A DNA stretch of 64,000 bases. Source: Podarcis muralis. Lineage: Eukaryota. Position 1 is the stretch's first letter; each line of letters starts with the position of its first letter. The stretch is taken from NCBI RefSeq assembly GCF_964188315.1, contig NC_135668.1, positions 54,560,001-54,624,000 of the forward strand. The letters are read 5' to 3'. The position numbers were made by a program, and so were the translations under genes. Positions 4,022 to 63,586 of the stretch are shown here, one piece after another. The notes under the pieces are model-generated. The model made no database searches. It saw only the letters and a program-made list of their open reading frames with translations, and had not been told where the DNA came from.

Positions 4022-7000
4022 CATTTATACCCGCTGCCCGGATTTTGGGTGAGAGTCTAATAATAATAATAATAATACAGTAGTACCTCGGGTTACATAC
4101 ACTTCAGGTTACAGACTCTGCTAACCCAGAAATAGTGCTTCAGGTTAAGAACTTTGCTTCAGGATGAGAACAGAAATCACGCAGCGGCAGCGGGATGCCC
4201 CATTAGCTACAATGGTACTTCAGGTTAAGAACAGTTTCAGGTTAAGAATGGACCTCCAGAACGAATTAAGTACTTAACCTGATGTACCATTGTAATAATA
4301 ATTTATTATTTGTACCCTACCCATCTGGCTGGGTTTCCCCAGCCACTCTGGGCGGCTTCCAACAGAACACTAAAATACAATAACCTATTAAACATTAAAA
4401 GCTTCCCTAAACAGGGCTGCCTTCAGATGCCTTCTAAAAGTCTGGTAGTTGTTTTTCTCTTTGACATCTGGTGGGAGGGCGTTCCACTGGGCGGGTGCCA
4501 CTACCGAGGAGGCCCTCAGCGCTGGACCCCAGTGTCTGGGCAGAACGATGGGGGTGGAGATGCTTGCCGGTCAAGGGCTGGCCTGAGTTTCTAGTCAAAG
4601 GAGGTCCAACAGTGGCGAGCAGCAGGCAAATCCCAGCCCAGGGCCTGGCACCAACCAAGCCAAGGCCTTGGCAGGCTGCAGTTGCCTGGGTGGTCCAGAG
4701 ATTTCAGCAAGGCCTGCTCATCCCTTAGTGGGACCTCTTCAGCGGGAAGACACATTTTGCCTCTGGGTCTGCCCCTTTGGGCAACGCTTTACTGAGACTC
4801 TGTGTGTGTGTGCACATGCTGCCGACAGGGGGCTAGAAACTTGTTTCACAACAACACTCAACCTCCTGTGCCAGGTGGCTGTTCAGTCGCAACCCTGGCA
4901 ACGGATGCCACAGATTTGTGACCTTTGTACACAGCGCAGGAGCCGGTGCTGCTGACTGCTCCCTCGAGGATGTGGGCCAAGGAGGGCAAAAGGTAGGGGG
5001 AGGGAGGTGTCAGGCAACCCGGTCCAGAGCAGAGGCCGGAGGCACAACCCTGCCCGGGAGAAAGCACCAAGGGGCCAGCCTCAAAGCCAGGCTGAGAACT
5101 ACAGGGAGGGCAAAGGCTGGCTAACTGACAGGGGGATTCCCGCAAGCACCCCCCACCCCAGCAGGCAGCAGGTCCGGGTTTGTAGCCCCTCCTGTCAGCA
5201 GAAGCTGCTTCTTCCTCCTGAGCTCCAGGTGGGGTCTTCTCTGCAGCCGAAACAGCCTCCCCCGGCTCCGTACCTGCATGTTGAATTCAAAGGCCTTGTT
5301 GGCCTCTTCGACGATCCTCTCCTTGGTCCCCTTGTCCAAGTCCAGGGCGTTGAGCCGGGCTCTGTAGAACTGCTTGAACTGCTGGGGGTTGGAAATGTTG
5401 TCGAAGATGTAGAACTGGACCCCCTCGCCGGTGCTGGGCAGCTTCAGCGCCCGCTGGGCCACCTTCTTCAGCACCTGCCCCCCTGACAGGTCCCCCATGT
5501 AGCGGGTGTAGGCATGAGCCACCAGCAGCTCCGGCTCGTGCTGTCCCACATGCCGGATGCGGTCGATGTAGCGCTGGGTGGCCTCTGAGCACTGGACCTT
5601 CTCCTGCCAGCCTTCCCCGTAGAAATACTCCAGGTCTTTCATCAGGGCCTCCTTCCGGTGCAGCTCCAGGGGGAAGTAGAGAGGGGTGAAGCCCGGCTGG
5701 TCCTTGTTGCGCTCCATCTCCTCCTCCAGGGCAGAGTACGTGAAGTACAGGGCCACGGTGCCCAGCTGCGAGAGAGAAGAGGAGCCATGTGGGGAAAGGA
5801 GACAGCACGCAACCCCGGCTTCCCCTCCAGAGAGCCTCACCTGGTCAGGAATTATGGGGCCTGGCAGAGGTGAGGGGGCACAGCTTGCCCACCTCTAGCC
5901 TACAATGCCTGACTGGCAGAAGCTCTCCTGGGTCCCAGGCAGAGAAGAGTCTTCCCAGGCGCTGTTGCTCGAACCATTTTCATGCCGAGATGCGGAGGGC
6001 ATGGAAGCAGGGGCTCTGCTAGGGCACTTGGCTGCACTCTCAGGCTGGCCTCCTTTGCCCCAGGCCATGCTGCTTGGGAACCCTCCTAACTGCCTGGGCA
6101 ACATGTCAGCAACTCCTTTCAAATGAGGGGTTTGGAGCCCATCGGGTGGCTGCTTGAATTTCACTGATCTGCCCCCACGATCTGATGAGTTCACGGTGGA
6201 CTATGGAGGGCAGCAGGTTTGAGGCAAAAGACTAGAGACTGGAACAGTCCTGGGTGATGTGGGCTAAAACATTGCCTCCCTGGATGGTCCCCCCGAAGGA
6301 GTTGCTTCTGGATCCAGTGCTGTCTCTGGGGGCTCACACAGCCTCAGTGGCTAGAAGGGCCTTTTACCAGCTACGACTGGTTCTACAGTTACAGCTGTTC
6401 CTGACACAGGAAAGCCTGGCCCCTATAGTTCATGCATTAAGTGACTTCAAGGCTAGATTATGGCAATGCGCTGCCTGTGGGTCTTCCTTTGTGCTTGATC
6501 TGGAAGCTGCAGTTAGTGCAAAATGCTGCGGGGCCATTGCTGCCAGCAGTGGGGCCATGTCAGTCTATAACCCCTGTGCTTGGAGATCTGCACCGGTTGC
6601 TACTGAGCCAGGTTAGTATATAAAGCCCTTAACAACCAGGGACCAGTTTACCTATGAAATCACCTTATCACACTCAACCGCTTCGGTCGGCAGAACTGTC
6701 ACTACGACAGCTGCTACATAATACCATTCTGCATTTATAAGAACTTCATTGTTTGGCAGCACCTAGACTTGGGGACTCCCTGCGCAGGTGCACAGCCTGG
6801 GAGTCATTTGGGACTCACAGCTGTCCATGGAGTTGCAGGTCAATTGTGTCCAGGCCAATACGGTATCTTATAAACACTTTGAGTTTTTAAAACAAATAAT
6901 CAAGTGGTGTATAAGTGTTATGAAATAACATATAAGTAAGATCTCCAGCCCCTGACTAGTGAACAGGGAAGGCTGAGCAGCTGCCACTAAGCCCACTTCT

Positions 7001-11770: not shown

Positions 11771-11798
11771 TTAGTTATGTACTGTCATTGTACCCCCA

Positions 11799-11834
<36 letters not shown>

Positions 11835-13140: not shown

Positions 13141-18671
<5,531 letters not shown>

Positions 18672-30290: not shown

Positions 30291-31239
30291 CAGGACTACA
30301 ACTCCCATCAACCCTAGCTAGCAGGACCAGAGTTCAGGGATGATGGGAATTGTAGTCCGACGGCAGCTGGAAGCCCCAGTTTGACCGACGGTTTGGCCTT
30401 CAGACGGAGGCGATCGCGGGTTGCTGTTGTGGGGCGAGAGGAGCTGCCCCTCGGCTTTCCGACGCCCTCCTTGCTTCCATCTCCAAGCTCTGACCTCCGG
30501 ACCCAGCAGCAGCCCGCACAAGACCCTCCTGTCTCGCCCAGCGCCCTCTCGTGGGGTGAGGGGCAGAGGGGGACTCTTCCCCCCCAACTGATTTCGGGGA
30601 AGAAGTTCTGCGCCCCAAGGAGCCCCACTCCATGCCCTGGCGGGGACGGGGGTGTATATTCGCTTAGTGGAAGGACCCCGCCCTTCTGTCAGCGGCTGTA
30701 TTTCCATATGTTGCTCAGTTCCAGGGATCCCTCAGTGGTCATCATTCCCACCCCACCTGGGTTCACTTTCCGCTGGGGCAACAGTCCTATGGGGTGGGGA
30801 GAGACGACGACGCAGACAGGCCAGGTCTCCCGTCACCCTCCCTCCCTACGGTCAGGAGAGTCGTTGGTGGGAGCCTTATACCCAGGGGAGAAAAAAGGAT
30901 CTTACTGAAGGCCTGGCCGCCCCTCACTAAAGCCCCCCTCGCTCGAGGAACAACGCTCGCTGCCCCATTTGAAGAGAAGGTCTGAAGGCTCCTGCGCGCC
31001 CCCTTCCCGATCTCCAAGGGAATACAGCGAAGAGGCTGCTCCAAGGCTTATTAGGAAGGAGCCCGAGGCTCGCGCCCTGAAGATGGTCAGCAAGAGGGCT
31101 TTCATCCCTTCTTTGGACTCCCTCATCACCTTTGAGCTCTTCTCCAGAATAGAAGTTCACAGTGCTGAGTCCAGAGCCTCCCCCCCCAACCCTGCCCTCC
31201 CCCAAAAAAGTGAGGCGCAGCAGAGAGTGGTTCATGCGT

Positions 31240-31245
31240 TTTATT
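31240..31245 (-). other. HBAD: Globin polyadenylation signal AATAAA
   Basis: tttatt on +, about 80 nt downstream of the globin stop codon. Confidence 0.85.
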
Positions 31246-31323
31246 GCTCAATAACACAGCGGAAGCGGAGCGCTCTAGATCCAGAGCCAAATGGCAGCTC
31301 CGAGGGGGCGGGCGGCGGGGGGC

Positions 31324-31971
31324 TCATCTGTACTTCTCGGTCAGCACCTGGGCCACCAGGCAGAAGAACTTGTCAAAGGCCATGTAGACCAGGGCGTTGT
31401 AGTCTCCGCGGAGGCTGGAAGCCAGTGTCACGTGGAGGCACCTGGTCAGAAACTGCAAAGGAGAGAGAGAGAGAGAGAGAGACGGGGGTCAGGAGGGGGG
31501 GTCGGTCAGGTGGGGGAGGGTCGAGGGAAGACCCAAGGCGCGCCCCTCCTGGCCCTCGTCCGCCCCGTCGGCGCGCTTGCCTTGAAGTTGACGGGGTCCA
31601 CGCGGAGGTTGTAGGCGTGCAGGTCGCTGAGGTCGGACAGGCAGGCGCGGATGTTGTCGATGTTCTTGATGGCGCTGTCGAGGGCCTTGATGATCTTCTG
31701 GCCTTGGTGGTGAATGTCGTTGGAGCCGGGGCACAGGTCGTAGTGCGGGAAGTAGATCTTGGACTGCATGTAGACCTGGAAAAGCCTGCGGGGAGGGAAG
31801 GGGGCCGTCAGGAAAAGGGACGGGGCGGGAGGAACCAGACTGGGCTTCTCTCCCTTGGCCGCCCCCTCGAGCCTACCTGGTCAGCGCTTCGCCGCCCATA
31901 TCCTCGTGCTCGGGGGCCAGTTTGGCCCAGCAGCTCTTGATCACCTTGCACTCGTCAGCAGTCAGCCCCAT
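31324..31971 (-). CDS. HBAD: Hemoglobin alphaD-type chain (142 aa including Met), 3 exons
   Basis: Exons 31971-31877 (95 nt), 31785-31581 (205 nt) and 31452-31324 (129 nt) have the canonical alpha-globin sizes. Protein: MGLTADECKVIKSCWAKLAPEHEDMGGEALTRLFQVYMQSKIYFPHYDLCPGSNDIHHQGQKIIKALDSAIKNIDNIRACLSDLSDLHAYNLRVDPVNFKFLTRCLHVTLASSLRGDYNALVYMAFDKFFCLVAQVLTEKYR. LHAYNLRVDPVNFK, terminal EKYR and the GC donor of intron 2 point to alphaD. Confidence 0.93.
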
Positions 31972-32039
31972 CTTGGCAGCAGGCAGCAGGTCGAGTTACT
32001 CTGTAAGTTCCAGGAGGTAGCGGAGCAGGGAGTCCTGCA

Positions 32040-32110
32040 GGGGCCGCCGCTTTTATAGCCTCCGCCCGCCCCTTCGAGCCGAGGCTGCAGCCGCCGCCCT
32101 CTTATCGCGC
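32040..32110 (-). promoter_or_regulatory. HBAD: Globin proximal promoter (TATA, GC boxes, GATA-like site)
   Basis: TATAAAA on - at 32051-32057, GGGGCGGGCGG just upstream, and GATAAG on - at 32101-32106. Confidence 0.75.
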
Positions 32111-32382
32111 AGAGCCGGGTTGCGGGAGAGGTCGCCTGCGCTCGGGCGGAGAGCTAAACTCTCCCCATGCGCTCCTGGAGGGGCTCCGGGCTCTGGCTGC
32201 TCCGGGAGGGAGGGGTGCTTACCCTTTTACCACGACACTCCGTTCCAAAGAGCCCCCTCCCTCCAGGCTGCCCCCTACACTCCCCCTTCCGAAACCATCT
32301 GGGACATGCAATGACACATGTGATGGCTTATTTTTGTAAAAGAATGTATTTTATCGTTTCCCCCCCACATATAGTGGACATA

Positions 32383-32824
32383 TGGAAGTGAGAGCTGGAA
32401 GTGAGTATGGAAGTGACAGCTGGACCATACAGAAGGCTGATCACCGAAGAATTGATGCTTTTGAATTCTGGTGCTGGAGGAGACTCTTGAAAGTCCCATG
32501 GACTGCAAGAAGATCAAACCTCTCCACTCTTAAGCAAATCAGCCCAGAGTGCTCACTGGAAGGACAGATCCTGAAGCTGAGGCTCCAATACTTTGGCCAC
32601 CTCATGAGAAGAGAAGACTCCCTGGAAAAGACCCTGATGTTGGGAAAGATGGAGGGCACAAGGAGAAGGGGATGACAGAGGACGAGATGGTGGGACAGTG
32701 TTCTTGAAGCTACAAACATGAGTCTGACCAATCTGTGGGTGGCAGTGGAAGACAGGAGTGCCTGGCGTGCTCTGGTCCAGGGGGTCACAAAGAGGCGGAC
32801 ACTACTAAACGACAACAACAACAA
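32383..32824 (+). mobile_element. RTE-BovB LINE 3' fragment
   Basis: Encodes SWTIQKADHRRIDAFEFWCWRRLLKVPW, has a (CAA)n tail and 12-bp TSD ATAGTGGACATA (32371-32382, 32825-32836). Confidence 0.93.
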
Positions 32825-33296: not shown

Positions 33297-34253
33297 ATCT
33301 AGAGGGAGAGTGACTGCCTTCCTGACCCCACTGGGGCCCTCTCCCCAGTCTCCTTCATCCTTGACTTCCCTTCCCTCACTCTATCCATCTATCCATCCTA
33401 AGTCACAAACAACCACCACAACTCCCCTTGGTTTGCCAGTCGCAATGCACACCTAGGGACGGGTGCTGCAAGTGTGCAAATGATTAAGAGCTCCTTGTTT
33501 ATTTTTGCGTGGCCGAGAGGGAATCTTGCAAGCCTGAGCTTGAAGCGTAGGTTGGAAAGTCCCCCCCAAACAGCACAGAAATGCCTGGATGTTTCTTGTC
33601 CTCCAAACCTCCCTGATCCCCCTCTGCACGACCCCTTTAGACAGCAGGCCTGGGGGCAAGGAAGGGCCCTTCCTTTCCCCCCTCTAGGGCAGTCCCTTTA
33701 GGAGTCCTCATCCCCATCCATTCTGCTGCTGCTGCTGATTTCCTTCCCAGTGAAGAATTGGACTCTTTGGCCGGCAGAAAGAGCCAGAGTCGCTGGAGGC
33801 CTGAAGGAGGGAGCTGCCCCAAAAGTCCCCTCCCCTCAGCTATCTCCTCAGAGACACAGCCTGCCTTATCCTCCAGCTTGCAGGGGGTGGCCAGGCTGAT
33901 AGGAGGAGGAGGAGGAGGAGCCTGGGCTCTCAGCTCACCCCAATCTCTGCGCAGAAAGCCACCCTGGCCTCATCCTGAGGGATGCTCCTGCCTTCTCACC
34001 CAACTGGCAGGCACGGACTCTGCACTCCCTGCTGCTTTGGGTGCAGAGAGATGTCTTTTCGGGGAGGCAGCGGAGCTCTGCTTCAGGGCAGAACCCAGGA
34101 GGGCAGGATCCGTACCTCAATCTGTCCAGTGCTGCTCTGACTGCCTCTTAAGCAGACAGGAGAATACATCGCAGTGAAAGAATTAATTAAAAATCCACCC
34201 AAGTCCATTTTTGCTGACTGTGCATTGCAGTTCCTTGTTTTTCTGGCCACACT

Positions 34254-47429: not shown

Positions 47430-48450
47430 ACAAATCCCCTCTGGGCTGTAAAGCTCGCCAGGGCATCCTCTCGCGGGTGAGTTGGTTTCTTTTGCCTCGC
47501 CTACCTCGCAAGGTTCTTGTCGGGATAAAACTGGGGCGCGTGGGAAGGGCGAGAGCCCCGTGGGCTGGACTGGGCGGCAGGACTTTCTCCCCAAACCTTC
47601 CAGGTGGAAGCGCCACCGTCGTACCTGCGCGGCGCCTCCCGGGCGAAGGCGCCCCTCCGCCCGGCTCCTCCTTCCTCCTGGGCGCCGGATGGTGCTCAGT
47701 CCCCGGAGCGGCGGCAGAGGAGGAGGAGGCGGCGGCGGCGGAGGAGGAGGCGGGGACGGCCGGGCGGGGCTTGGCGGCGATTCGGATCGGAGCCCGGGCG
47801 GCGGCGGCGGCGGCGGCGGCGGGAGGCTGAGCATGAATCGCTTCAAGGTGTCCAAGTTCCGCCACGCGGAGGCCAGGGTGGCCCGCAAGGAGGTGGGTGC
47901 CGCCGCCCCGACGGGAAGGGCCCCGATCCCCTCCCGGAGAGTAACCCCAGGCGCCCTCCCTGCCCGCCGCCCGCACCTGTCTCCGGGGTGGGGGTCTTGG
48001 CTCCGCTGCCCCCGATCTCCCCACCCACCCCCGGGATGCCCTGCTCCCGATTGGCACCCTCTGCCCGGGGGCGCCCCCGGGGATTCCCGCTGCCCACCAG
48101 CCGGCGCGCCCCCGGGGGCCCGGGCACTCCTTCCTTCCCCTGCCCAGGGCGGCGGCGGCAGCAGCAGCAGCAGCGGGGGCGCCTTCGGGGTTAACCCCTT
48201 CGGAGCCGCGGCCGCCGAGGAGGTGGGGCGCCTTCGGGGCGTCGGCAGCCGCGCTCCGGGCGTGGGTCACAAGACGCGGCTTCCGCGGCTTCCGCTCTCC
48301 CTTCCCCATCCTGTGCACAGCGCAGCTGCTCTCCGGGCTTGCAGCCGGCTTCCTCCTCGGGGAGCCAAGGGGGGAAGGTGGCGCCTGCAGAATCGGGGGG
48401 CGGGGGAGGAGCTTGCCTTGGACTGAAGCCCCGCCTCCTTTCCCTCCGAT
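47430..48450 (+). promoter_or_regulatory. CORO7: CORO7 CpG island with GGA/GGC repeats in the 5' leader
   Basis: CpG-dense; GGA/GGC runs at about 47716-47755 and (GGC)8 at about 47797-47821. Confidence 0.75.
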
Positions 48451-51400
48451 GGGATGGTGATCATAGCATTGTAGAGTTGGGAGGGACCCCCCGGGGTCAT
48501 CTAGTCTGACCCCCGGCAAAGCAGGAATCTCAGCGGAAGCATCCGTGGCAGACGCCCACGCAACCTCTGCTTCAAAACCTCCCAGGACGGAGAGTCCCAT
48601 AGATCATGGAATTGTGCAGTTGGAAGGGACCACCAGAGTCATCTAGTCTAACCCCTTGTAATGCAGGATGGGGGGGCAGGAAACCCCCCCAGGAGCTGCT
48701 ACTTTGCCTGCGATCTGGGGAGTGCCGCAGCCTTGCGCCCTCTCTCATCTGCTTTGGGCGACCCTGGGCAACCCGTTTCCATTTGCCCTCATCCTGAGTG
48801 GAGGGGGGGGGTCTGGATCCTGAGCCTCAGGCCTTGGCCCAGCTAGTCCAGGAGGGTCTCTAAGACAGGCGGTCGTCTTGGGCTTCTTTCCCCGTCCCCT
48901 GCTGCTCTTAGACAGGAGCTTAGAGGCTGGGAAAGTGGACGTGAAAAGGCTCAAACAGCTTTGAAATTCTGTGCTTATTTTAATAGGAAGTGGTGTTCCT
49001 GCAACAGGGTGCTGAGCCCAGGATCTTCTGCATGCAGTGCAGGTGTCCTCCCACTGGGCTGTGCCCCCTCCTTAAGGGGAAGCATTTTGGGGTGGCCTCC
49101 AGGGCACTGCCCACAAACCAGACAGATGTTTGGGTGTCCAGGAGGCCTCCAAAATTGTGTCACTTTTTAGTTTGCGCAGAGCAAAGTGGCTGGCTGTGAA
49201 GAGCACAGGCCTTGGGAGGGAGCCCCCTTACAGTCTAGGGGGCAGCTTGAGCCCCCTGCCCCCTTCCCTCTGCCCCCTCTTGCGGGTCTGAGCGGCGACC
49301 CTCTTGCATTTGATGCCTCATGCGGTTCGGACTGTGAGCTCTCTGCAGGGCCTCCTGTGTGGTGGCACCACCAATGCAGCATGGATGACTTCTCAGGCCT
49401 AAAGGCCAGAATCGGATGAATGCCCTGAAATTTCAATGATTGCAGGAATTATTATTATTAATATAATATAATATAATATAATATTGCAGAACCAGGGAAA
49501 TGTCAGGCTTTCTGTTGCCTGGGCAACCTCCTCTGCCTGCTGAAAGTGTGAGCACTCCTTTGCTGGTGTGTGTAGCAGAAGTTGCATGAAAGAGCCTATT
49601 TTTAAGCGGAATAAAACCAGGCAGCCAACAAGCCTCCCTTTGTGTTGCCGCTGTGCAGTTTTTGAGGGCTGCTGCTGGAGAGTGAGAGCCAAAGGGCAGG
49701 TGGGCAGAGCTGGGGCATGCGGAGAATTCCCGTGCATAATCTCAGTGTCATTTTTTAAACCCACTTTTCGTCTTGAAGCAGCCACCCCCCCCAAGTGTCG
49801 CTATGGTGCAGAGCGCATGACGCCTTCTCAAGCAGCTCCCACAGGTCTTCCTAGTCCTTTCTTCATAGGAAGGGAGAATTCTGGGAGCTGCAGCTTCTCC
49901 CACCACTCAGATCCAGTGATGGGAGAAGCTGCGTTTGCTACAATTCTTCCACGTCAAAGTTTGAGGCTTTGGAATTTGGCCACAGAAGCTGCGCACACGT
50001 CAACCTTGACTTGGTTCCCCTCTGCTCTAGGAACATATAATGTAAGGCTTTAGTCCTCCCTTTTGAGCATCTGCCTGGAGCACCATCCACCAGGGAGCTG
50101 CAGGGAGGGATGTGGACGGAGGAAGAAGAAGTTCTGGGAGCTCCGTTGCCTGGCAGTTTGTCTTCCTCTCGTGCGGTTTGGGGTGGAAGAGACCACAGGC
50201 AAAGGGGAGGGAGGGCTACCTTCAGATGTCTTCTAAAAGTCAGATAGTTGTTTATTTCCTTGACATCTGATGGGAGGCTGTTCTACAGGGTGGGTGCCAC
50301 CACCGAAAAGGTCCTCTCCCTGGTTCCCTGTAGCCTCACTTCTCTTAGGGAGGGAACCGCCAGAAGGCCCTTGGAGCTGGACCTCAGTGTCCGGGCAGAA
50401 CGATGGGGGTGGAGTCGCTCCTTCAGGTATACTGCGCCGAGGCCGTTTAGGGCTTTCAAGGTCAGCACCAACAATTTGAATTGTGCTCGGAAATGTACTG
50501 GGAGCCAATGTAGGTCTTTCAGGACCGGTCTTGGCGGCCACTCCCAGTCACCAGTCTAGCTGCTGCATTCTGGATTAGTTGTAGTTTCTGAGTCACCTTC
50601 AAAGGTAGCCCCATGGAGAGTGCATGGCAGTAGTCTAAGCAGGAGATAACCAGAGAATGCACCACTCTGGCGAGACACTGCGCAGGCAGGTAGGGTCTCA
50701 TCCTGCGTACCAGATGGAGCTGGTAGACAGCTGCCCTGGACACAGAATTGACCTGTGCCTCCATGGACAGCTGTGAGTCCAGAATGACTCGCAGGCTGCG
50801 CACCTGGTCCTTCAGGGGCACAGTTGCCCCATTCAGGACCGGGGAGTCCCCCACACCCGCCCACCTCCTGTCCCTCAAAAACAGTACTTCTGTCTTGTCA
50901 GGATTCAACCTCAACCTGTTAGCCCCCACCCATCCTCCCAAAATGGGCCGCACACTGCACACTTGTGTTGGAATGTACACACTGGCTCTCTTCCCGGCTG
51001 GGATAAGGACAGAAGGACTCACGGATTGCGCTAAGCACATGGGGAGGTGCATTGCTCCGTTGGGCATATCCTTTCCACTTTCGGGTGCCCGGTAATAGTT
51101 TGCAACCCCTTTGCAAAAGCTCACAGTCTTTCCTCTACTTCCCTGTGGGGGGCGGCCCTCTGCTTTGTAATAATAATCATCATAATAATAATAACACTAT
51201 TAATAATATATTTATACCCTGCCCATCTGGCTGTGTTTCCCCAGCCTCTCTGGGCAGCCCCCAACAGAATATTAAAAACACGATAAAACATCAAAAATTA
51301 AAAGCTCCCCTATACAGGGCTACCTTCAGATGTCTTCTAAAAGTCGGATAGTTGTTCATTTCCATGACATCTGATGGGAGGGCGTTCCACTGGGCGGGTG

Positions 51401-53526
51401 CTACCACCGAGAAGGCCCTCTGCCTGGTTCCCTGTAGCCTCACTACTCTCAGGGAGGGAACTGCCAGAAGGCCCTCGGAGCTGGACTTCAGTGTCTGGGC
51501 TGAACGATGGGAGTGGAGACGCTCCTTTGGGTCTTTGATTTGGGATGGGCGCAGGACCCCTCTCTGGCCCCTGGGCTTGGGGTGCAGATGCTTCTCCTCC
51601 TCTGACTCTGCAAGAAGATCCCTGCTGCTCTGCAGGAACCAGAGAGGAAGCTGCAGTGTCTCTTTCCCTCTCTCACTCCCAGCTTTGGTCTGGGGGAGAA
51701 GGATGTGTCAAAGCTGTAGGTGGTTCCCTTTCCCCGCTGAGCTGTGGGGCAGGGAATGGCTCTCCCCCTCCCTTCAGCTGGGCCTTCTCTCTCTCCTGTG
51801 TTGCAGGCCTGGATTGGAGACCTCCGAGCTGGCTTCCCGGCTGCTTCGGCGAACCACATCAAGGCTGGCGGCCGCTGGATCGCCTTCCACACAGACTCGG
51901 CAGGTAAGCTGTGGGCGAGGCCAGGCCCTGCCCTGCCCTGGGGTGGGTGGCTCTGCTGCTCTCCATGGGGCACGCTTGCACAGTGCACTTCGACCGGGCA
52001 GAGAGGTTGTGCCAACCTGTGCAGGCATGTGGGAACTGTTGGGAACTGGCACCTGGCAGCAGGGAGAGTCCCAGTTGCACGAGGATGGGAAACTCCTTGG
52101 GAGTTCCAGTTGCCAGGGGAGGAGGCATCCCCAGGAGGCTCGTGAAAAGGAGGGAGGAGGAAGGGATGGGTGTGCCATCTTGCCATTTGTGCTTCCTGCC
52201 GCTGCTGGTGGGCTTGGGCTTCCCTCGTGCACTACCCTCTCCCAAAGGTTCCTGCTTGCACCTCCCGGCTTTTCCAGGCCTTAGAAACTCTTGGGAAGAG
52301 CAGGGGAGATGCCTGCCTCCTTCGCCTGAGGGGCAGGGGTTGGAGAACGCTTGTCCCAAGGGGACTCACCTGGACTGGGCACCGTTGTAAGGCAGGGGTG
52401 CAGAACCTCTTTCAGGGCTGCTGAATGCGGCCTTGCCGGCCTCTCATTCTGGAGCTCATGGCCCCTCCCTTGCCAGCCCTGCTGTACCCTCAACCCCCAA
52501 GAACACAGCCTTGAATTGAGATAGTTCCTCTTCCTTGCCTGGGTGCAGCAGGTATGTAGAAACCTCTGGCTTTCTCTGCAGCCAGAGGTTACACACAGGT
52601 CTGATTTGCGCCAGTTGCTTTGCCCAGTGCTTTCCCCCCTAGGGGTAGGCATACCCCTAAACATTTTGTGAATCTAAGTTTGGCCTCATTGAGGGGAGGT
52701 ATTTCAATACAGTGGTACCTCGAGTTAAGTACTTAATTCGTTCTGGAAGTCTGTACTTAACCTGAAACTGTTCTTAACCTGAAGCACCACTTTAGCTAAT
52801 GGGGCCTCCTGCTGCTGCCGTGCCGCTGGAGCACGTTTTCTGTTCTCATCCTGAAGCAAAGTTCTTAACCTGAAGCACAATTTCTGGGTTAGTGGAGTCT
52901 GTAACCTGAAGCGTATGCAACCCGAGGTACCACTGCATGAATAGGAAAATGAGAGTACCCCTAAACATTTTTTTTAGAAAAAATGCACTGGCTCTGCCCT
53001 CTTTGGCCTCTGGCCTCAACTGCCCTTGGTGTGTGGCCCTCAGAAGTCTGTCCTTAAGGGAATGCGGCCCTCTTGCTGAAGAAAGGCTCTCCTTAGCACC
53101 ACCAGTCACCCTGCTACCTGGGGCTGGATGCTCCTTCCAGGCACTGGCTGTGCAGAATCCAGAGGTCCCTTCTGGGACAGGGTCCGCGGTGCCCTTTGTG
53201 GGCTCCTTCAGTCGCTGGCAGAGGCCCGCAAGGGGCTGCCTGCGGTGTTAGAAATGAACCGGGCGCGTTTTGCGACTGCTGTGGGTCCCACTGCGACCAC
53301 ATGGAGATCTCCGCATGCCAGGTTGGCAGCTGGGGAATGCAAAATGTCACTTAGAGAAGGATCTGAAATATTTACCTTGTTTTATTCTGGGTTGTTTGAT
53401 TGGATGTTTTAATGTGTTGTAAACCACTATGAGATTTGTTCTTTAAAATACAAAGAAGTAAAGAAGCAACCACTAACACCTAGGCCTAAGGTGCCAATTG
53501 GCGATTAGATTATATATATTGAGTTT

Positions 53527-53582
<56 letters not shown>

Positions 53583-56500
53583 TATTATTATACAGCAGTA
53601 CCCTGGTTTAAGAACAGCCCTGTTTACAAATGATTCGGTTTACAAACTCTGCAAAACCCGAAGTAGTGTCCCGGTTTGCGAACTTTACCTCGGTCTAAGG
53701 GCACCGGCAGTGGAAGGCTTCATCAGGGAAAGCGCACCTCAGTTTAAGAACAGTTTCAGTGTAAGAACAGCCTTCCAGAATGGATTAAGTTTGTAAACCG
53801 AGGTACCGCTGTACCGCCCTATACCTGGGGGTCTCAGGGCGGTTCGCAGAATATGTGCGAGAAAGAAAATTCAGTGTAAACACAATACATAGCTTTACAC
53901 TGTTGATACTGTTGTGTTGACACAGATATAGCCATATGCCTTACCAAGATGAACAAGACAGGAGTCTAGCTAAGTTGCCTGTGAGTTGCAATGTGCCAAC
54001 ACAGTGTGTGTGTTTGTGTGTTTTTCTAGAACATCGGGTTGGAGAACTTCCCCATGGTCATGCCTTGAATCTTCCCAGTTGTGTCCCATACAATGACTTT
54101 GTTTCTGGGGACGGTGGCTGTTTCCTGCAGGACATTTGTGCCGCTTCTAGCACAGGCTTCCTCAACCTCAGCCCTCCAGATGTTTTTGGCCTACAACTCC
54201 CATGATCCCTAGCTAGCAGGGCCAGTGGTCAGGGATGATGGGAATTGTAGTCTCAAAACATCTGGAGGGCCGAGGTTGAGGAAGCCTGTTCTAGTATCAT
54301 GCCAAAGGTTATTAGTGAAACCAAAAAAGAACTAAAAGGTGTTGAATGTTCTCTTTAAATTTGAAGGTTCATTACTGTTCCACAAGATGTGTATTTCTTT
54401 AAAGGCCAGAGCAAATAACGTGACCTAGTTTTACAGCTGTGCAGCAGTATAGCAGGTGCTGTTAAGTTATGTTAATTAATCTGTTGGATATAGTATATAA
54501 AGAGCAGCACCTAGCTCTCTCAGTACCCTGGTGGATGGGTCAGGCTTACTGATATTTTGTAAAAGGAGTTTTTGTTTTTGTTATGCAAACCTAGCAAAAG
54601 TTATTTTAGCATTCCTTGTAATGTGTGGTCTCCCCAGCACGCCTTCTCTAGCGCAACTAATCTGCAAATTGCCAACAAAAGTGAAATTCTGCTTATTGGG
54701 GATGCGTTAAAACCCAGTTTACTGCAGTCTTACCCCGCATAGAAAAAACTAGCAATGTTTGTTGCCTCAACGTCTCCCATTAGGACTGGGAGAGTTCCCT
54801 GTTTGAAACCCCCCCCTCATATATTGCACCCATCTGCCCCCCCCCCCAATGCATGTATCTGGTCTCCCTGTGACTTGTCTCGTTCCTTCCCCTTCCAGGT
54901 GTGCTGGGCCTTGTGCCCTTGGAGAGCCAGAAGAGATCCCAGAGGGTCGTTTCGCAGCTGGGCTGCCACTCAGGTGAGCTTGGCACCTGGGCAGGGCTGG
55001 AGCCTGCCTAGGTGGGACGATGGGGTGAAGTTGGGGTAGGCGAGGCACCAGCTTCCTTTTCAGAAACTTCGTTAAATTCACGCCGCCATTACAAAACGGA
55101 AACGCCAAGGTGCCGCCGGAGATTTACAGCAAACGTAAATAGTTTACCAAATGTTACGCTTGTGATGATAAATATACAATGGATTTGACTGTATTTCTGT
55201 GCCGCTTCCGTTTCACACTGTCAGAGACTGCCTCCAGGTCCCAGCTCACAGAGGACCAACGCTAGCCAGTAGTAATGTACAAAAGTCTTTATTGCAGTAC
55301 AGTTTCCATTTTCAAGCCCTAGCGTGCGTCTCTACGTCTAGAGACTAGACCGGCGAAGCTCCGTCTGAATCTCCGCCCCCTGTACACCAGCTTAAGACTC
55401 TAACCTTACTCCACCTCTTCCGTCTCTCCTTCCGCCTCTGGGTCCTACTACCCCCCGGGGTCCCTTCCTTCCTGGACGCTTCGGACGCGGACCCCTCTGA
55501 CTCTTCCCCCTCCCTTCGGCGGGCTTTAGGACCTGGCTCCCTTTCCGGGCTGCTCACTGCGCCACCCTCTTGTACGTTTGAACTTGGCGCGCGCGCCCAG
55601 TCTCCGACCTTCCTTTTGACCGTTTCCTCGCTCTCTGATGCAGGCGTGGCCAATCCTGACTCATGTCCTTCCGCTGACGGAGAGCTGCCTGATGTCGATA
55701 CCTGGGACTCTTCCCCCCTACTGCTCTTTGGTGGGGAAGCTGGTCCCGATTTCCAACTGCTGCTCTCTGAGTCCCCTCTGGCCCCTCCTTCCTGGGGTGT
55801 TCCCCTTGGCAACCCCTTTGCTCTGACCACGGGAGCCCCCTTCTGTGAATCCTCCGATTCACTGGAAAGACTTAGAGACCTAGGGCGGCTGTCATCGCTA
55901 ACCTCTCCCTCGGATTCCTCCCCCTCGGTCTCTATCTCCTCCCTTTCCTGTGCCTCTGCTCCTGAACCCCTGACACACGCGAATCCCAAAGCGGCTTAAT
56001 AAATAACAGCGACAAAACATCACAGGCGTAAATCATATAATATAAATAATGATACATTGGTGAAACAATTACGATCTGCTATCAGCAAACCAGCAACTAA
56101 AAGAACAGGCTGAACGTCACAAATACAGCAAAAGTCATAGATTCATAGCCCCCTGCAATGATATTGTAAATTCTGCCAGTTTATAGGCACCTGAGATTCA
56201 TATTTCCTGCCCTGAAATCCCCACCACCTCCTGGCTCGTGTGTCTCCAGCTTCCCCTTGTTCCCGGCTTCTCCAATTCCCTCCTTTAAGCCTGGCTGTTG
56301 TTTTGAGATGGTTCAGTCCCATTAAGCCCCAGTCGAGAGAGGGGCACAAGCAGGGAAGAGGCTCTTGGTCCCTGCCTGGGCACAGGATGAGCCCTGCTCT
56401 CCCGAGGCAGCTGCCACGAGTCTCCCGCTGCCGGCTTGCATCTGCTGCAGGCCTGTGGAAACGGAAAATGACGCAGCGACCTACTTTTCCCAGGCAGGCC

Positions 56501-58008
56501 AGATGCCTCAGCCAGGCGGCCGATTTCTGTGCCAGGTCCACCCCCCCCAATACCACTTGCCCTTGAGATGGAGGTGGTTATGATTATTGTTATTGTTATT
56601 ATTATTTTATACCCTGCCTTTCCCCTGACGGTCGGCTTACAGATAAAAATGAGAACAGCTCAAAACATTGGAATAAAATGTTTTTAGAAAATTAAATATT
56701 GAGAGAAGTAAAATTACGCTTGCATTTCTGGGGTGTGAGCCTGGGCAGTGTGCCTGGAGGTCCTGGGCTGGCCAGACGACAAGGCCCTGCTCCCAGCTGC
56801 GCAGAGCAGGACTCTTGGCTGCAGGAGTTGCCAGAAGGAGGTGTAAAGGGCATCATCCAACTGTCTTGGGGACTCCAGATTTGTGTAGGGTTTAATCCTG
56901 AGCCTTTTGTTTTCCCAAATATGCCACATATGTTTATTTATCTGTAAATCTCCCTCAGCCAATAAAGTGAGATGAGTGTCGCACCCCCAGAGTCACCCGT
57001 GACTAGACCTAATGGTCAGGGGTCCCTTTCTCTTTACCTTTAATTCTATGAAAAGCATGCCAATAATTACAATAAAAGCAGCACGGCACTAGCCCTTGCG
57101 GTAAGAGCAGTCAGTTCCCAAAAGCCTGTTGGAACAAGAAGGCTTTCACCTGCCGGCAGAAGGACAAGGAGGGAGCCAGTCTGGCTTCCCTGGGCAGGGA
57201 ATTCCAACGTTGCCTGGGAGCAGCCACCGAGAAGGCCATGTCCTGCATCACTACCAGGCAGGCCTGGAAGGGGAGAGGGATGGAGACAAGGTTCTTCCTC
57301 AAAGGTCTCGCAGCCTGGGCAGATATGTATGATGGAATATGGTCTTTCAGGTCACTTGGACTTCAGCCATGGAAGGTTTTATAGGTCATAAACCAATACA
57401 GCCGTACCTTGGTTTTCAAACAGCTTAGTTCTCGAACGTTTTAGCTCCTGGACACCACAACCCTGGAAGTGACTGTTCCGGTTTGCGACTATTTTTGGAA
57501 GCTGAACATCCGGTGGGGCTTCCGCCGCTTCCTGCAGCCAATCAGAAGCCGCGCTTTGGTTTCTGAACGTTTTGGAAGTCGAACAGACTTCCAGAACGGA
57601 TTCTGCTTGACTTCCAAGGTACGACTGTACTTTGAATTGTGCCTGGAAACAGACCGGTAGCGAGTGCAGCTGTTGCAACAGGGGGGCTGGCTGTTTGTTC
57701 CCTAAAAGGCAGCTCTGCTGTGGGGACACCATATTGCAGAAAGTAAAAAGCAGGGCACCCCAAAAGTTGTTGACAAAGTGCTGCCTTTTGGAAATTCCCC
57801 CCTTTGAAATCCCTATAATGTCTGGGAAAATCCAGGTGTGTGGCAACCCTATTATATGATAGGGCACCCGAAAAGGTGGGGGGGTTTTGTCTGTTTTTTT
57901 AATACCTGTGTTTCTGGTTGTAGTCCTGAGAGTGTGCCTGCGGCTTCTTGCAGAAGTGGGCCTGAGCTGTGCTCTGCAGATGCAAGATTAATAATAATAA
58001 TAATAATG

Positions 58009-58059
<51 letters not shown>

Positions 58060-61000: not shown

Positions 61001-63586
61001 CTAAGCTATAGCTTGTTTAGCTTATATGTAAATCCGGCACTGATTCAAGCCATGACTGTTTAGAGGAGTATTAATATCACTTTATAAGTGAAGATGGGGC
61101 GTTTCTTTTCTCCATCCCTTGCCTGGAGGGGTCTGCTTGGCTTTGCTGTGGTTCCCTCATATTCCTGTCCTCCCCCCTTGTGGGTCGGAGTTCATCTTCC
61201 AGGGTGACAGACGGACCTTTGCTCCTGGCCTTTTTCTCTGCAGGTGAAGGTGTGGCGCCTCCTGGACTCTGGACAGGACCTCTCGTCTTCCCCCCACATT
61301 GCCCTGGGGCCGGAGGGCCGGCCGGTGGATGTTCTCCTCTTCCACCCCACAGCAGACAGCATCCTGGCCAGTGGGGCCCAGAAGGCAGTGAAGGTTTGGG
61401 ATGTGGGGCATCGGCAGACTCTGGCAGGTGAGCTCCGTGGTGGGGCACTTTCAGGTTGGGGGTGTTATAAGAAAAAACTGCTCCTTTTCCCCTTATGGGA
61501 TACCCAGGCGCTGCATTCTGGATTAGTTGTAGTTTCCGGGTCACCTTCAAAGGTAGCCCTATGTAGAGCGCATTGCAGTAGTCCAAGTGGGAGATAACCA
61601 GAGCATGCACCACTCTGGCAAGGCAGTCCACAGGCAGATAGGGTCTCAGCCTGCGTAGCAGATGGAGCTGGTAAACAGCTGCCCTGGACACAGATTTGAC
61701 CTGTGCCTCCATGGACAGGTGTGAGTCCAAAATGACTCCCAGGCTGTGCACCTGGTCCTTCAGGGGACACGGTTCCCCCATTCAGGACCAGGGAATCCTC
61801 CACACCTGCCCAGTGGCGTAGCGTGGGTTGTCAGCACCCGGGGCAAGGCAAGTAATTTGCGCCCCCTAACCCGTGGATTTGCGCCCCCTAACCCGTGGAG
61901 TTGCGCCCCCTAACCTGTGGATTTGCCCTAACCCCAGATGTTGCACCCAGTGCGGCCGGCCCCCCCTGCACCCCCCACGCTACGCCACTGCACCTGCCCA
62001 TTCCTTGTCCCCCCAAAACGGTACTTTTGCCTTGTCAGGATTCAACCTCAATCTGTTAGCCGCCATCCATCCTCCAACCGCCTCCAGACACTCACACAGG
62101 ACCTTCACTGGTTCTGATTTGAAAGATACTTAGTTCCTGAATCTCTTGTGCATATTGATAACTTTGCTCAGCTTAACAGATACTTGCCAGACTGTATTTA
62201 CAGGGAGGTGTAAGCAGTCCCTACAGCCCAAAGACCATTGTAAAGCTTCTCCCATTTCCTTCCTCCTTGCAGAGAAATATTTGAGGTCAATTTGGGAGAG
62301 TCAAAATGGCTTCAGGATTGTTCTCCTGTACTATTTCAGAGAAGTGGTTTATATTCTGACGTATATGTTTGCCTTGTACGTTTATGAACATTATATATAT
62401 ATATATATCACCTTAGAATTCCTATAACGGGACTGGGAAGGGCAGGAGGGGAAATGGCCCGAGTTCCCCCCTCTGCCAGGGACTGCTTGTCTCCAGCGGT
62501 TGCTTTGCGCCAACTCGGGCTGTTTGCCCCTCTAGCCCAAGACTGCCCACCTAAGCTGGCAGTGGTGGCTCTCTGGGGTTGCCTCAGGCCGCCTTTCGCA
62601 CCCGCTCCCACTGGTCTCTTTCAGCTGAAGCAGGGCACTCTGCGCTTCCCAACAAGTCTTCTGCTAAATATTCTGAATTTATTCCAAATATTCTGTCAGG
62701 GATTGTGGAGGGGTGGGCTCGATGACCTCTGGAGGTCCCTTCTAACTCTGCTTGGAAGCAGAATAAAGGTAAAGGGAGCTACAGTGTACAGGTGCATCGT
62801 GGCAAGCTAGCTGAGCACTGCCCTTTGCTTTCCTGGCAAAAGGGGGTGGTGTGGGGTGTCACAGTGAGCTCTGGGGTGGGATTAAAAACCCCTTGTGCCC
62901 CCCTTTCCCCTTTGTTTCTCTGAGCACACAGATATTGGGAGAAGAGGTCAAGGACGAGCCTTTTCCAATGGTTGCCTTCCAGCTGTTTGGAACTACAACT
63001 CCCATCAGCCTCAGCAAGCCCTGGTTGGGGCTTGTGGGAGTTGTAGTTCCAAAACAGCTGGCAGGCACCACATTTGCATTTCCGGTGAGATGCTGGGAGG
63101 AAGGGCAGAAGGTGTTTGTCCCCCCCCCCCCAGGCCAGGAATGTTGTGTGAACAGGAAACGGGAACCGCAAGGAGGCCCTGTTGCCTAGCAACCGGCCAC
63201 AAGGTCTGCAAGCTCCAAGCGGAGGCTGCCTGACTCTGGGATGGAATTACTGTTCCTGAGTAGCAATTCCTCCTTCTCAGCACAATGCAAAGCCTTGTCC
63301 TCCTCTCCTTGCAGCCCTGGGACAGAAAAGGATCCCACAGGAGGAGATGGCCTCTGACTGGATAATAATAATAATAATATTATTATTATTTATACCCCGC
63401 CTATCTGGCTGAGTTTCCCCCATCGAGTGTTAAAAACAATACAGCACTAAATATTGAAAACTGCCCTAAACAGTTGTCTTTTAAAGTTAAGATAGCTGCT
63501 TATTTCCTTCACATCTGAAGGGAGGGCATTCCACAGGGCGGGCACCACTACTGAGAAGGCCCTCTGTCTGACTAACTGAAACATGC

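What the first reader, a model, noticed from the sequence alone, without database searches (positions are those of the whole stretch)
31240..32110. A solitary, intact alphaD-type globin gene inside the HMOX2-NMRAL1-DNAJA3-CORO7 block
Seen: a complete globin gene (TATA box, exons of 95/205/129 nt, AATAAA, open frame) lies 3 kb upstream of DNAJA3 and 16 kb upstream of CORO7, and I found no second globin in 64 kb. Established: in mammals and birds alphaD (HBM/mu) sits between alphaE/zeta and alphaA in the NPRL3-linked cluster, and in human DNAJA3 and CORO7 are neighbours with no globin between them. Inference: this lineage has moved alphaD (or a duplicate) out of the cluster to another site in the same ancestral linkage group, so alphaA and alphaD may be unlinked or separately regulated. 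I cannot tell whether this placement is already described for squamates.
Basis: partly seen in the sequence, partly recalled or inferred. Interest (0 to 1): 0.88.

Follow-up and report, generated by a model that had tools for sequence, protein, structure and literature searches.

The report
Second alpha-D haemoglobin gene beside DNAJA3
This wall lizard has a working, expressed second copy of the alpha-D haemoglobin gene about 0.45 Mb from the usual globin cluster; the copy is old, shared with other lizard families, kept similar to the cluster gene by gene conversion, and contradicts published statements that reptiles have one alpha-D gene.

Summary
An intact three-exon alpha-D globin gene lies on the minus strand at 31324-31971. 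It sits 2.7 kb upstream of DNAJA3 and 15.8 kb from CORO7 exon 1, and the window has no other globin. RNA reads show it is transcribed, spliced (including a GC-AG intron 2) and polyadenylated. Contigs from three independent runs bridge both edges of the block.

The gene is a duplicate, not a relocation. Close relatives (P. lilfordi, Zootoca) keep an alpha-D beside NPRL3, and transcripts with the NPRL3-side 3'UTR are co-expressed in this species.

It is not lineage-specific. Lacerta, Zootoca, the amphisbaenian Rhineura and the agamid Pogona carry an alpha-D at the same CORO7-DNAJA3 site, inverted and 0.4 Mb from the cluster where both loci were seen. Sceloporus has the segment between its two copies inverted. 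A skink lacks the copy.

In lacertids, flanks group by position but gene bodies group by species, which indicates gene conversion. A conserved upstream GATA/CACCC module was duplicated with the gene. Lacertid alpha-D genes show dN/dS of 2-5.

No paper found describes this locus, and a 2025 paper states reptiles have a single HBAD. This scan had only noted the same gene's altered haem pocket.

The parts
31877..31971 (-). alpha-D globin exon 1 (ATG at 31971; 95 nt)
   Evidence: Frame and GT donor. RNA joint 31784/31876 is seen in about 10,000 reads of X23 and 3,333 reads of X24.
31581..31785 (-). exon 2 (205 nt); encodes E7 Gln and proximal His F8
   Evidence: Pfam Globin E=4.5e-15. PDB haemoglobin D alpha chains E=1e-23.
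31453..31580 (-). intron 2, a GC-AG intron (donor GCAAGC) containing a (GA)n run
   Evidence: Spliced RNA contigs of X17 and X19 join about 31450 to 31581 (table 8). All 11 alpha-D genes modelled have a GC donor; the two alphaA genes have GT.
31324..31452 (-). exon 3 (129 nt including the TGA stop)
31228..31323 (-). 3'UTR with AATAAA at 31245-31240; poly(A) site near 31228
   Evidence: Molecules begin at 31228 in X23 and X24. Stranded coverage at 31229-31275 is 464 versus 1. Past 31301 this part differs from the NPRL3-side 3'UTR, so it is diagnostic of this copy.
31972..32106 (-). 5'UTR and core promoter: GATAAG (32106-32101), GC boxes, TATAAAA (32057-), transcription start about 32013-32017
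   Evidence: Read ends at 32017 and 32013. The GATAAG - GC box - TATA layout recurs in most squamate alpha-D promoters examined, at both positions.
31195..32159 (-). gene block of the duplication, homologous to the NPRL3-side alpha-D
   Evidence: 87.1% identity to P. lilfordi L002 9824-10778 and 85.7% to Zootoca L001 9824-10760.
33396..34252 (-). upstream block of the duplication (single copy in the window; not transcribed)
   Evidence: 91.7% identity to L002 4957-5780 and 88.8% to L001 4809-5667, collinear with the gene. RNA depth is 0.
33839..33902 (-). conserved module: CTATCA, CCACCC, CTGCAAG, GATAAG, GCTGTGTCTC, GATAG. Putative erythroid enhancer.
   Evidence: Nearly identical (at most 1 substitution in 64 bp) at both positions in the lacertids. 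Conserved in both Rhineura loci and upstream of the Pogona DNAJA3-side gene. Degenerate in Sceloporus L007. An enhancer function is inferred from the motifs only.
32400..32824 (.). SINE-like repeat inserted between the two duplicated blocks
   Evidence: Four further copies in the window at 91-93% identity; very high contig depth.
21308..28559 (-). DNAJA3 coding exons
   Evidence: tblastn with P. muralis DNAJA3 (P0340) gives 11 collinear exons. Pfam DnaJ and DnaJ_CXXCXGXG.
47768..61594 (+). CORO7, 5' part (exon 1 at about 47768-47899)
   Evidence: Collinear tblastx matches to the 5' part of Tiliqua CORO7. N-terminal MNRFKVSKFRH motif.
16675..17175 (+). NMRAL1 exon
   Evidence: Pfam NmrA E=2e-11.
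5124..5894 (-). HMOX2 exon
   Evidence: Pfam Heme_oxygenase E=8e-68.

Best explanation
This is a functional second alpha-D haemoglobin gene, here called the DNAJA3-side alpha-D.

Origin. A block of at least 3 kb was copied in inverted orientation from the NPRL3-linked cluster into the CORO7-DNAJA3 intergenic region, about 0.4 Mb away on the same chromosome. The block held the alpha-D gene, its GATA/GC-box/TATA promoter and an upstream GATA/CACCC module. The copying most likely happened once, before lacertoid and iguanian lizards split and after skinks branched off.

Maintenance. Both copies have been kept since. Gene conversion between the inverted copies repeatedly homogenises the stretch from the TATA box to the stop codon, so the copies look young inside each species. 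Their flanks keep the old positional identity. In the Sceloporus lineage, recombination between the two inverted copies flipped the segment between them.

Expression. In this wall lizard both copies are transcribed at high level. The DNAJA3-side copy gives roughly a quarter to a third of alpha-D-type mRNA in the one run where a diagnostic site was listed.

Protein evolution. In lacertids both copies are changing amino acids faster than silent and intron sites. Changes include the haem pocket (E7 Gln) and the alpha1-beta2 contact (C2 Pro to Met).

Shown here: the gene's anatomy, its expression and splicing, synteny in eight species, the contrast between flanks and gene body, and the dN/dS values. 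Inferred: a single origin, enhancer function for the module, the recombination mechanism behind the Sceloporus inversion, and adaptive rather than relaxed evolution.
For: Anatomy.

Expression:
- Stranded RNA depth reaches 18,000.
- About 10,000 reads cross the intron-1 joint.
- Spliced contigs use the GC donor of intron 2.
- The poly(A) site is at 31228 and the transcription start at about 32017.
- Reads cover this copy's own 3'UTR.
- Reads that run loose at 31301 carry exactly the NPRL3-side 3'UTR of P. lilfordi. Diagnostic site 31314 is 72% NPRL3-type and 28% window-type.

Assembly: contigs from X1, X2 and X7 bridge both block edges.

Identity: the protein tree places the gene in the squamate alpha-D clade at 100/99, and the two copies of each species pair at 100/97-99. 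The GC donor is present in every alpha-D modelled.

Synteny:
- Zootoca: NPRL3-aD-aA-GbY, and aD-DNAJA3 425 kb away and inverted.
- Rhineura: the same layout, 400 kb apart.
- Lacerta: two tandem copies before DNAJA3.
- Pogona: CORO7-aD-DNAJA3-NMRAL1.
- Sceloporus: NPRL3-aD-DNAJA3 and CORO7-aD-GbY-TMEM8.
- Tiliqua: a 3.3 kb CORO7-DNAJA3 spacer with no globin.

Conversion: lacertid flanks group by position (95/93 and 88/96), but the Zootoca gene bodies group by species (97/98). The 5' edge of the converted tract lies at the TATA box.

Module.

Selection: dN/dS is 2.2-5.5 with bootstrap 96-100%. Exon divergence is 9.1% against 3.3% for introns, p=0.004.
Against: - A single origin rests on shared position, orientation and block content, not on sequence. 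In Rhineura even 1.9 kb upstream is 98% identical between the two copies, so a recent re-duplication there cannot be excluded by sequence.
- Only one alpha-D is annotated in Thamnophis, Varanus, Anolis and Hemicordylus. Their DNAJA3 loci were not inspected, so losses are assumed rather than shown.
- Geckos, tuatara and turtles were not inspected.
- This genome's own NPRL3-side gene was not read. Its presence rests on RNA loose ends, on relatives, and on an unchecked scan note.
- The expression share comes from variant frequencies in one run of unknown tissue, and allelic variation blurs it.
- dN/dS above 1 in short, conversion-prone genes can be inflated. No codon-model test was run.
Confidence: 0.74

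Rival explanations
1. Independent, recurrent duplications: alpha-D was copied into the CORO7-DNAJA3 spacer separately in lacertids, amphisbaenians and iguanians. On this view the within-species similarity reflects young copies rather than gene conversion.
For: In every species with both copies sampled, the copies pair by species. In Rhineura the similarity (97-98%) runs over about 3 kb, including upstream DNA. Lacerta shows that new tandem copies do arise at this site.
Against: The same spacer, the same orientation and a position 2-3 kb from DNAJA3 recur in four families. Within lacertids, flanks group by position and are 18-22% diverged between positions, while the gene bodies are 96-99% identical in Zootoca. 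That contrast requires conversion of old copies. The same upstream module accompanies the DNAJA3-side copy in Pogona, Rhineura and the lacertids.
Confidence: 0.15
2. One reading: this lineage moved its only alpha-D out of the cluster, leaving alphaA behind.
For: There is only one globin in the 64 kb window.
Against: P. lilfordi and Zootoca keep NPRL3-aD-aA. RNA from this species contains a second alpha-D transcript with the NPRL3-side 3'UTR. The copy is shared with other families.
Confidence: 0.02
3. The copy is older than inferred: present in the ancestor of all squamates, or of sauropsids, and later lost in skinks and other lineages.
For: The macro-arrangement, with NPRL3 and CORO7 facing each other across about 0.4 Mb, is already present in the skink. 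Geckos, tuatara and turtles were not examined.
Against: The Tiliqua CORO7-DNAJA3 spacer is 3.3 kb, has no gaps and shows no trace of a globin. Hoffmann et al. 2018 report a single alpha-D, within the cluster, in birds, turtles, gecko and cobra, and an alpha-D processed pseudogene elsewhere in crocodilians.
Confidence: 0.08
4. Assembly artefact: a cluster gene was misplaced beside DNAJA3.
For: Contig depth over the gene body and the module is about 2-3 times that of the flanks. That is what collapsed paralogous sequence words would produce.
Against: Contigs from three runs and samples cross both block edges into unique flank. Five other assemblies show the same placement. The flanks and the 3'UTR differ from the NPRL3-side copy and are themselves transcribed.
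Confidence: 0.01

Closest known systems
Alpha-D globin (HBAD of birds and reptiles; orthologue of mammalian HBM/mu) in the NPRL3-linked alpha-globin cluster
   Same: Three exons of 95/205/129 nt and 142 aa. GC donor in intron 2. Placement in the alpha-D clade. GATA/GC-box/TATA promoter. Proximal His present. Expressed at high level.
   Different: It lies between CORO7 and DNAJA3, inverted and roughly 0.4-0.45 Mb from the cluster (0.4 Mb measured in relatives), not between NPRL3 and alphaA. E7 is Gln, E11 is Ile and C2 is Met. It has six cysteines.
Eremias multiocellata alpha-D2 transcript (PMC11117339, 2024)
   Same: A second, distinct alpha-D-type mRNA in a lacertid. It groups with the alpha-D1 of the same genus, as conversion-homogenised copies would.
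   Different: It is known only as cDNA. No locus, origin or wider distribution was given. Whether it comes from the DNAJA3-side gene was not tested.
Crocodilian alpha-D processed pseudogene between CFDP1 and BCAR1 (Hoffmann et al. 2018, PMC5786229)
   Same: An alpha-D copy outside the cluster in a sauropsid.
   Different: That copy is intronless, retroposed and dead. This one keeps its introns, promoter and upstream DNA (a DNA-level duplication) and is expressed.
Transposition of a beta-type globin to the olfactory-receptor region in amniotes (Patel et al. 2008, PMC2529266)
   Same: A globin copy leaves the ancestral cluster and persists as an expressed locus at a new site.
   Different: That locus lies on another chromosome and evolves independently. 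Here the copy stays within about 0.4 Mb of the cluster and is homogenised with the parent gene.
Inverted-repeat pairs that undergo gene conversion and flip the segment between them (for example the human FLNA-EMD region and sex-chromosome palindromes; from my own knowledge, not checked here)
   Same: Inverted copies are kept alike by conversion. The intervening segment is found in both orientations among lineages (Sceloporus versus the others).
   Different: The arms here are very short (0.7-3 kb) relative to the spacer (0.2-0.45 Mb). No within-species flipping was shown.

Membership tests
alpha-D globin (HBAD/HBM orthology group) | Globin fold of the alpha-haemoglobin type | tested here: met
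   Pfam PF00042 E=4.5e-15 on exon 2. The nearest single-chain PDB matches are haemoglobin D alpha chains 1hbr and 1v75.
alpha-D globin (HBAD/HBM orthology group) | Groups with alpha-D, not with alphaA or alphaE/zeta, in a phylogeny | tested here: met
   The alpha-D clade has support 100/96 and the squamate alpha-D clade 100/99. AlphaA sequences form a separate clade (98/92). No amniote alphaE sequence was in the tree; only amphibian zeta-like outgroups were.
alpha-D globin (HBAD/HBM orthology group) | GC (not GT) donor at intron 2 | tested here: met
   GCAAGC here, and a GC donor in all 11 squamate alpha-D genes modelled; GT in the two alphaA genes. The donor is used in mRNA. Bird HBAD predictions that read through as 'FKAS' fit the same donor. 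That chicken alpha-D has this donor is from my memory of Dodgson and Engel 1983, not checked.
alpha-D globin (HBAD/HBM orthology group) | Position between NPRL3 (or alphaE) and alphaA in the cluster | tested here: not met
   It lies between CORO7 and DNAJA3. It is therefore a positional paralogue, not the cluster gene.
functional haemoglobin subunit | Proximal His F8, Phe CD1 and distal His E7 | tested here: inconclusive
   F8 His and CD1 Phe are present. E7 is Gln, with His at E6. Gln at E7 also occurs in the alpha-D of Zootoca, Tiliqua, Varanus and Thamnophis. Oxygen binding was not assayed.
functional haemoglobin subunit | Transcribed, correctly spliced and polyadenylated | tested here: met
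   The tissue is unknown and protein was not examined.
processed (retroposed) globin copy | No introns, poly(A) tract, no parental promoter | tested here: not met
   Both introns, 190 bp of promoter and an upstream block are shared with the parent locus.
paralogues under concerted evolution (gene conversion) | Gene body groups by species while flanks group by locus | tested here: met
   Zootoca gene bodies are 96-99% identical against 79-82% for their flanks. No formal GENECONV-type test was run.
erythroid enhancer (GATA1/KLF1 type) | Clustered conserved GATA and CACCC motifs, open chromatin and factor binding in erythroid cells, reporter activity | tested here: inconclusive
   The motifs and their conservation are met. 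Chromatin state, factor binding and activity are not testable with these tools.

The most novel reading that the evidence does not exclude
Many squamates carry a two-site alpha-D system that published surveys missed because conversion makes the copies look like one gene.

The DNAJA3-side copy would be an autonomous mini-locus. It took its own GATA/CACCC enhancer with it, so it no longer depends on the NPRL3-embedded enhancers.

The two inverted copies bracket a 0.2-0.45 Mb segment that has flipped at least once. They act as a conversion pair that, in lacertids, spreads adaptive amino-acid changes between loci. Those changes include the haem pocket and the alpha1-beta2 contact, and they would yield haemoglobin D isoforms with new oxygen-binding properties.
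Probability: 0.35. Interest if true: 0.78.

Novelty: new variant of a known kind. Interest (0 to 1): 0.62.

Why it matters
The alpha-globin cluster is a textbook model for gene-family evolution and long-range regulation. Current accounts say squamates have exactly one alpha-D, in the cluster, with no duplication or conversion (PMC5786229; PMC12504858).

A conserved, expressed second alpha-D about 0.4 Mb away has four consequences:
- It changes the gene count used in comparative and selection studies. Transcriptome-derived 'HBAD' sequences may be mixtures of two loci.
- It offers a natural experiment on how a globin gene is expressed away from the NPRL3 enhancers.
- It gives a dated example of conversion and inversion between short, distant inverted repeats.
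- It flags lacertid alpha-D as a candidate for adaptive haemoglobin evolution.

Tried and rejected
- The window's own spliced protein could not be used as a query because a spliced sequence has no reference. I searched instead with an 87-aa open frame running from exon 2 into intron 2.
- No open frame of 275 aa or more overlaps a DNAJA3 exon in any locus. I therefore reached DNAJA3 proteins through a representative search with one exon, followed by a homologue search.
- The gecko DNAJA3 look-up (P0335, isoform X2) was not on record. Look-ups were then exhausted, so Gekkota, snakes, Varanus, Anolis, turtles and the second Pogona locus were not inspected.
- Pfam gave nothing useful for the CORO7 exons. 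CORO7 was confirmed by collinear tblastx against the skink gene.
- I tested whether the upstream block 33396-34252 is a globin relic. It has no protein similarity to globins and is not transcribed.
- I considered that the excess contig depth over the gene reflects a collapsed tandem copy, as in Lacerta. I rejected this because the downstream flank is at single depth. Words shared with the NPRL3-side copy explain the excess better.
- The Varanus 'second alpha-D' (P0121) turned out to be alphaA, drawn into the cluster by a fused gene model.
- The chicken CRE-2 paper describes a 3' element and gave no link to the lizard module.
Full report
**What is there.** The minus strand of the window carries a complete alpha-type globin gene.
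- Exon 1 is 31971-31877 (95 nt), exon 2 is 31785-31581 (205 nt) and exon 3 is 31452-31324 (129 nt with the stop). The product is 142 aa.
- TATAAA lies at 32057-32052 and AATAAA at 31245-31240.
- Intron 1 has a GT donor.
- tblastn with 29 alpha-type globins finds no other globin in the 64 kb; the best hit elsewhere has E=0.26.
- The DNAJA3 exons are mostly 98-100% identical to Podarcis muralis DNAJA3, so the genome is a wall lizard or a very close relative.

**The gene is active and the assembly is sound.** In two stranded RNA-seq runs the gene body is covered up to 18,000-fold, almost entirely in the orientation expected for a minus-strand RNA.
- The intron-1 joint 31784/31876 is crossed by about 10,000 reads in X23 and 3,333 in X24.
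- Assembled transcripts in two further runs join exon 2 to exon 3 at the GC donor.
- Molecules start at 31228, about 12 nt past the end of AATAAA, and end at 32013-32017, about 35-40 nt below the TATA box.
- Low-level intron coverage, and coverage of the part of the 3'UTR that differs from the paralogue, show that this locus itself is transcribed.
- Contigs from three other runs and samples cross both edges of the globin block into unique flank: 30329-31344, 31957-32442 and equivalents.

**A second alpha-D transcript is co-expressed.** Thousands of reads match exon 3 but diverge at 31301. Their loose ends spell exactly the 3'UTR of the NPRL3-side alpha-D of P. lilfordi.
- At the diagnostic site 31314, 72% of X23 reads carry the NPRL3-side base and 28% the window's base.
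- I infer that both copies are expressed together, with the window's copy giving roughly a quarter to a third of the mRNA. This is an estimate from variant frequencies in a run of unknown tissue.
- Several other sites are polymorphic and mostly non-synonymous: V10L, L110M, V122A, A134G and Q135E.

**It is alpha-D.**
- The closest proteins are lacertid and other squamate alpha-D chains.
- The nearest single-chain solved structures are the haemoglobin D alpha chains of chicken and tortoise.
- A maximum-likelihood tree puts the gene inside the squamate alpha-D clade (100/99), itself inside an alpha-D clade with birds and turtles (100/96) and apart from alphaA.
- All 11 squamate alpha-D genes I modelled have the GC donor in intron 2. 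The two alphaA genes have GT.

**It is a duplicate, and an old one.** The surroundings of related proteins in other assemblies are:
- Zootoca: NPRL3-aD-aA-GbY at 54.06 Mb. A second alpha-D lies 2.4 kb before DNAJA3 at 53.63 Mb on the same chromosome, in inverted orientation.
- P. lilfordi: NPRL3-aD followed by two further globins.
- Lacerta agilis: two tandem alpha-D-like genes before DNAJA3, collinear with the window. The second lacks exon 1.
- Rhineura (Amphisbaenia): NPRL3-aD, and CORO7-aD-DNAJA3, 0.4 Mb apart and inverted.
- Pogona: CORO7-aD-DNAJA3-NMRAL1, with a second alpha-D on the same contig.
- Sceloporus: two genes encoding identical proteins, arranged as NPRL3-aD-DNAJA3 and CORO7-aD-GbY-TMEM8, 0.23 Mb apart. 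This is what results if the segment between two inverted alpha-D copies is turned round.
- Tiliqua (skink): the same large-scale layout, with the cluster and CORO7-DNAJA3 0.39 Mb apart. Its CORO7-DNAJA3 spacer is 3.3 kb, free of gaps and free of any globin trace.

So the copy exists in Lacertidae, Rhineuridae, Agamidae and Phrynosomatidae, and is absent in one skink. The simplest history is one duplication in the stem of the group uniting lacertoids and toxicoferans. This rests on shared position, orientation and content, not on sequence age. Snakes, Varanus and Anolis have one annotated alpha-D each, but their DNAJA3 loci were not inspected.

**Why the copies look young: gene conversion.** In the protein tree the two copies of each species pair with each other at 100/97-99. 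Cutting the lacertid genes into pieces resolves this.
- The 190 bp upstream and 130 bp downstream group by position. The NPRL3 sides of Zootoca and P. lilfordi are 95-96% alike. The DNAJA3 sides of the window, Lacerta and Zootoca are 88-93% alike. Between positions the identity is only 78-86%. In the flank tree the two groups have support 95/93 and 88/96.
- From ATG to stop, the two Zootoca copies are 96-99% identical (97/98 in the tree).
- The window's introns are closer to the P. lilfordi NPRL3-side gene (96-98%) than to its positional orthologues (90-95%).
- The 5' limit of the homogenised tract lies at the TATA box.

The two positions therefore predate the lacertid radiation, and the gene bodies have been overwritten since.

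**What was copied.** Besides the gene block (31195-32159), a second single-copy block (33396-34252) matches DNA 4-5 kb upstream of the NPRL3-side gene in the same order and orientation. Transposable elements have since spread the two blocks apart.
- In Rhineura the duplicated stretch is nearly contiguous, about 3.1 kb at 97-98% identity.
- The core (33839-33902) reads CTATCA, CCACCC, CTGCAAG, GATAAG, GCTGTGTCTC, GATAG.
- The core is nearly invariant (at most one substitution) at both positions in the lacertids. It is conserved in both Rhineura loci and 2.2 kb upstream of the Pogona DNAJA3-side gene. It is recognisable in degenerate form upstream of the Sceloporus CORO7-side gene.
- It is not transcribed.
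- Three GATA motifs and a CACCC box are the usual make-up of erythroid regulatory elements. I infer that it is an enhancer copied along with the gene. This would explain high expression far from the NPRL3-embedded enhancers, but it is untested.
- The proximal promoter (GATAAG, GC box, TATAAAA) is retained as well.

**Fast protein evolution in lacertids.**
- Pairwise dN/dS is 5.5 between the window's gene and the P. lilfordi NPRL3-side gene (32 amino-acid differences from 39 nucleotide changes).
- It is 2.2 against Lacerta, 2.4 against Zootoca NPRL3-side, and 3.1 between the two NPRL3-side genes. dN exceeds dS in 96-100% of codon bootstraps.
- An iguanian pair gives 0.38.
- Exons are more diverged than introns: 9.1% against 3.3%, p=0.004, for the window against P. 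lilfordi.
- The window's protein has Gln at E7 (shared with several squamate alpha-D chains), Ile at E11, Met at C2 in the alpha1-beta2 contact, and six cysteines.
- I read this as positive selection. Relaxed constraint combined with conversion artefacts is not excluded without codon-model tests.

**Mechanism of the rearrangements (inference).** The copy keeps its introns and promoter, so it arose at the DNA level. Two routes fit the data:
- An inverted insertional duplication, followed in the Sceloporus lineage by recombination between the inverted copies.
- An inversion with staggered breaks that duplicated alpha-D at both ends. This would give the Sceloporus layout first, followed by re-inversion elsewhere.

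Counting events on the species tree favours the first route.

**Literature.**
- Hoffmann et al. 2018 place one alpha-D in the squamate cluster, using gecko and cobra scaffolds.
- Carvajal-Castro et al. [quoted passage not shown]
- A 2024 paper on Eremias reports, as a surprise, a second alpha-D cDNA, with no locus given.
- No paper in the library mentions DNAJA3, CORO7 and globin together.
- Public annotations do list the two genes, so the data are not new. I found no description of the system. The library lacks most subscription journals.

**Earlier notes of this scan (unchecked).**
- One note places this genome's alphaA 414 kb beyond the window's end, which fits the spacing seen in relatives.
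- Another, on this same gene, notes the altered haem pocket.
- Others report alpha-globin-derived haem-less mini-genes on another chromosome piece. A P. raffonei 125-aa protein of that kind appeared in my searches.

Noticed in passing
window 31453-31580; L001-L011 alpha-D genes: The GC donor of intron 2 is present in every squamate alpha-D examined. It probably explains why many automatic bird and reptile HBAD models read through the exon end ('...VNFKAS...') or are truncated. The Ensembl P. muralis model P0001 is one such case.
   Followed up: partly
L007 and L008 (Sceloporus undulatus CM032826.1, 23.34 and 23.57 Mb): The segment between the two alpha-D copies is inverted relative to other squamates (NPRL3-aD-DNAJA3 and CORO7-aD-GbY-TMEM8). 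Homology between the copies is confined to 689 bp at 98.7%. No alphaA gene is called between alpha-D and GbY.
   Followed up: partly
L003 9479-12413 (Lacerta agilis): A second tandem copy of the DNAJA3-side block lacks the exon-1 region and is annotated as a 119-aa protein (P0003). It is probably a truncated or dead copy.
   Followed up: partly
window 31581 (loose ends in run X24): 381 reads join the end of exon 2 to a different exon-3 start, encoding FLTRCLLLI instead of FLTRCLHVT. This points to a third alpha-D-like transcript, perhaps from the globin-derived mini-gene family noted elsewhere in this genome.
   Followed up: no
P0071 (Podarcis raffonei, 92.5 Mb contig): A 125-aa 'alpha-D-like' protein lacks the E-helix segment that holds the distal His. 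Its C-terminus (CVVAQVLTQKYR) resembles this window's gene. It lies on a different chromosome.
   Followed up: no
window 31314-31998: Coding polymorphism in this gene is high and mostly non-synonymous among public runs of the same species (V10L, A16T, L110M, V122A, A134G, Q135E). Some of these sites may instead mark the co-expressed paralogue.
   Followed up: partly
window 32400-32824, 28952-29376, 35831-36252, 46144-46567, 41341-41640: A roughly 425-bp SINE-like repeat is present in five copies at 91-93% identity. A further copy lies in the Zootoca NPRL3 locus.
   Followed up: no
L011 (Thamnophis elegans) 10001-17374: In this snake, alpha-D is followed directly by a weak globin model on the opposite strand and then by TMEM8. 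No alphaA is called within 10 kb.
   Followed up: no
P0030, P0014: A 142-aa protein labelled as from the nematode Acrobeloides nanus is 61% identical to lizard alpha-D. A Colinus entry is flagged UNVERIFIED_CONTAM. Both are likely vertebrate contamination in those records.
   Followed up: no
window 33734-33930 and 31345-32442 (DNA contig depth): Contig word depth is about 2-3 times that of the flanks over the module and the gene body in three runs. This is as expected if long stretches are identical between the two alpha-D loci of this species.
   Followed up: partly
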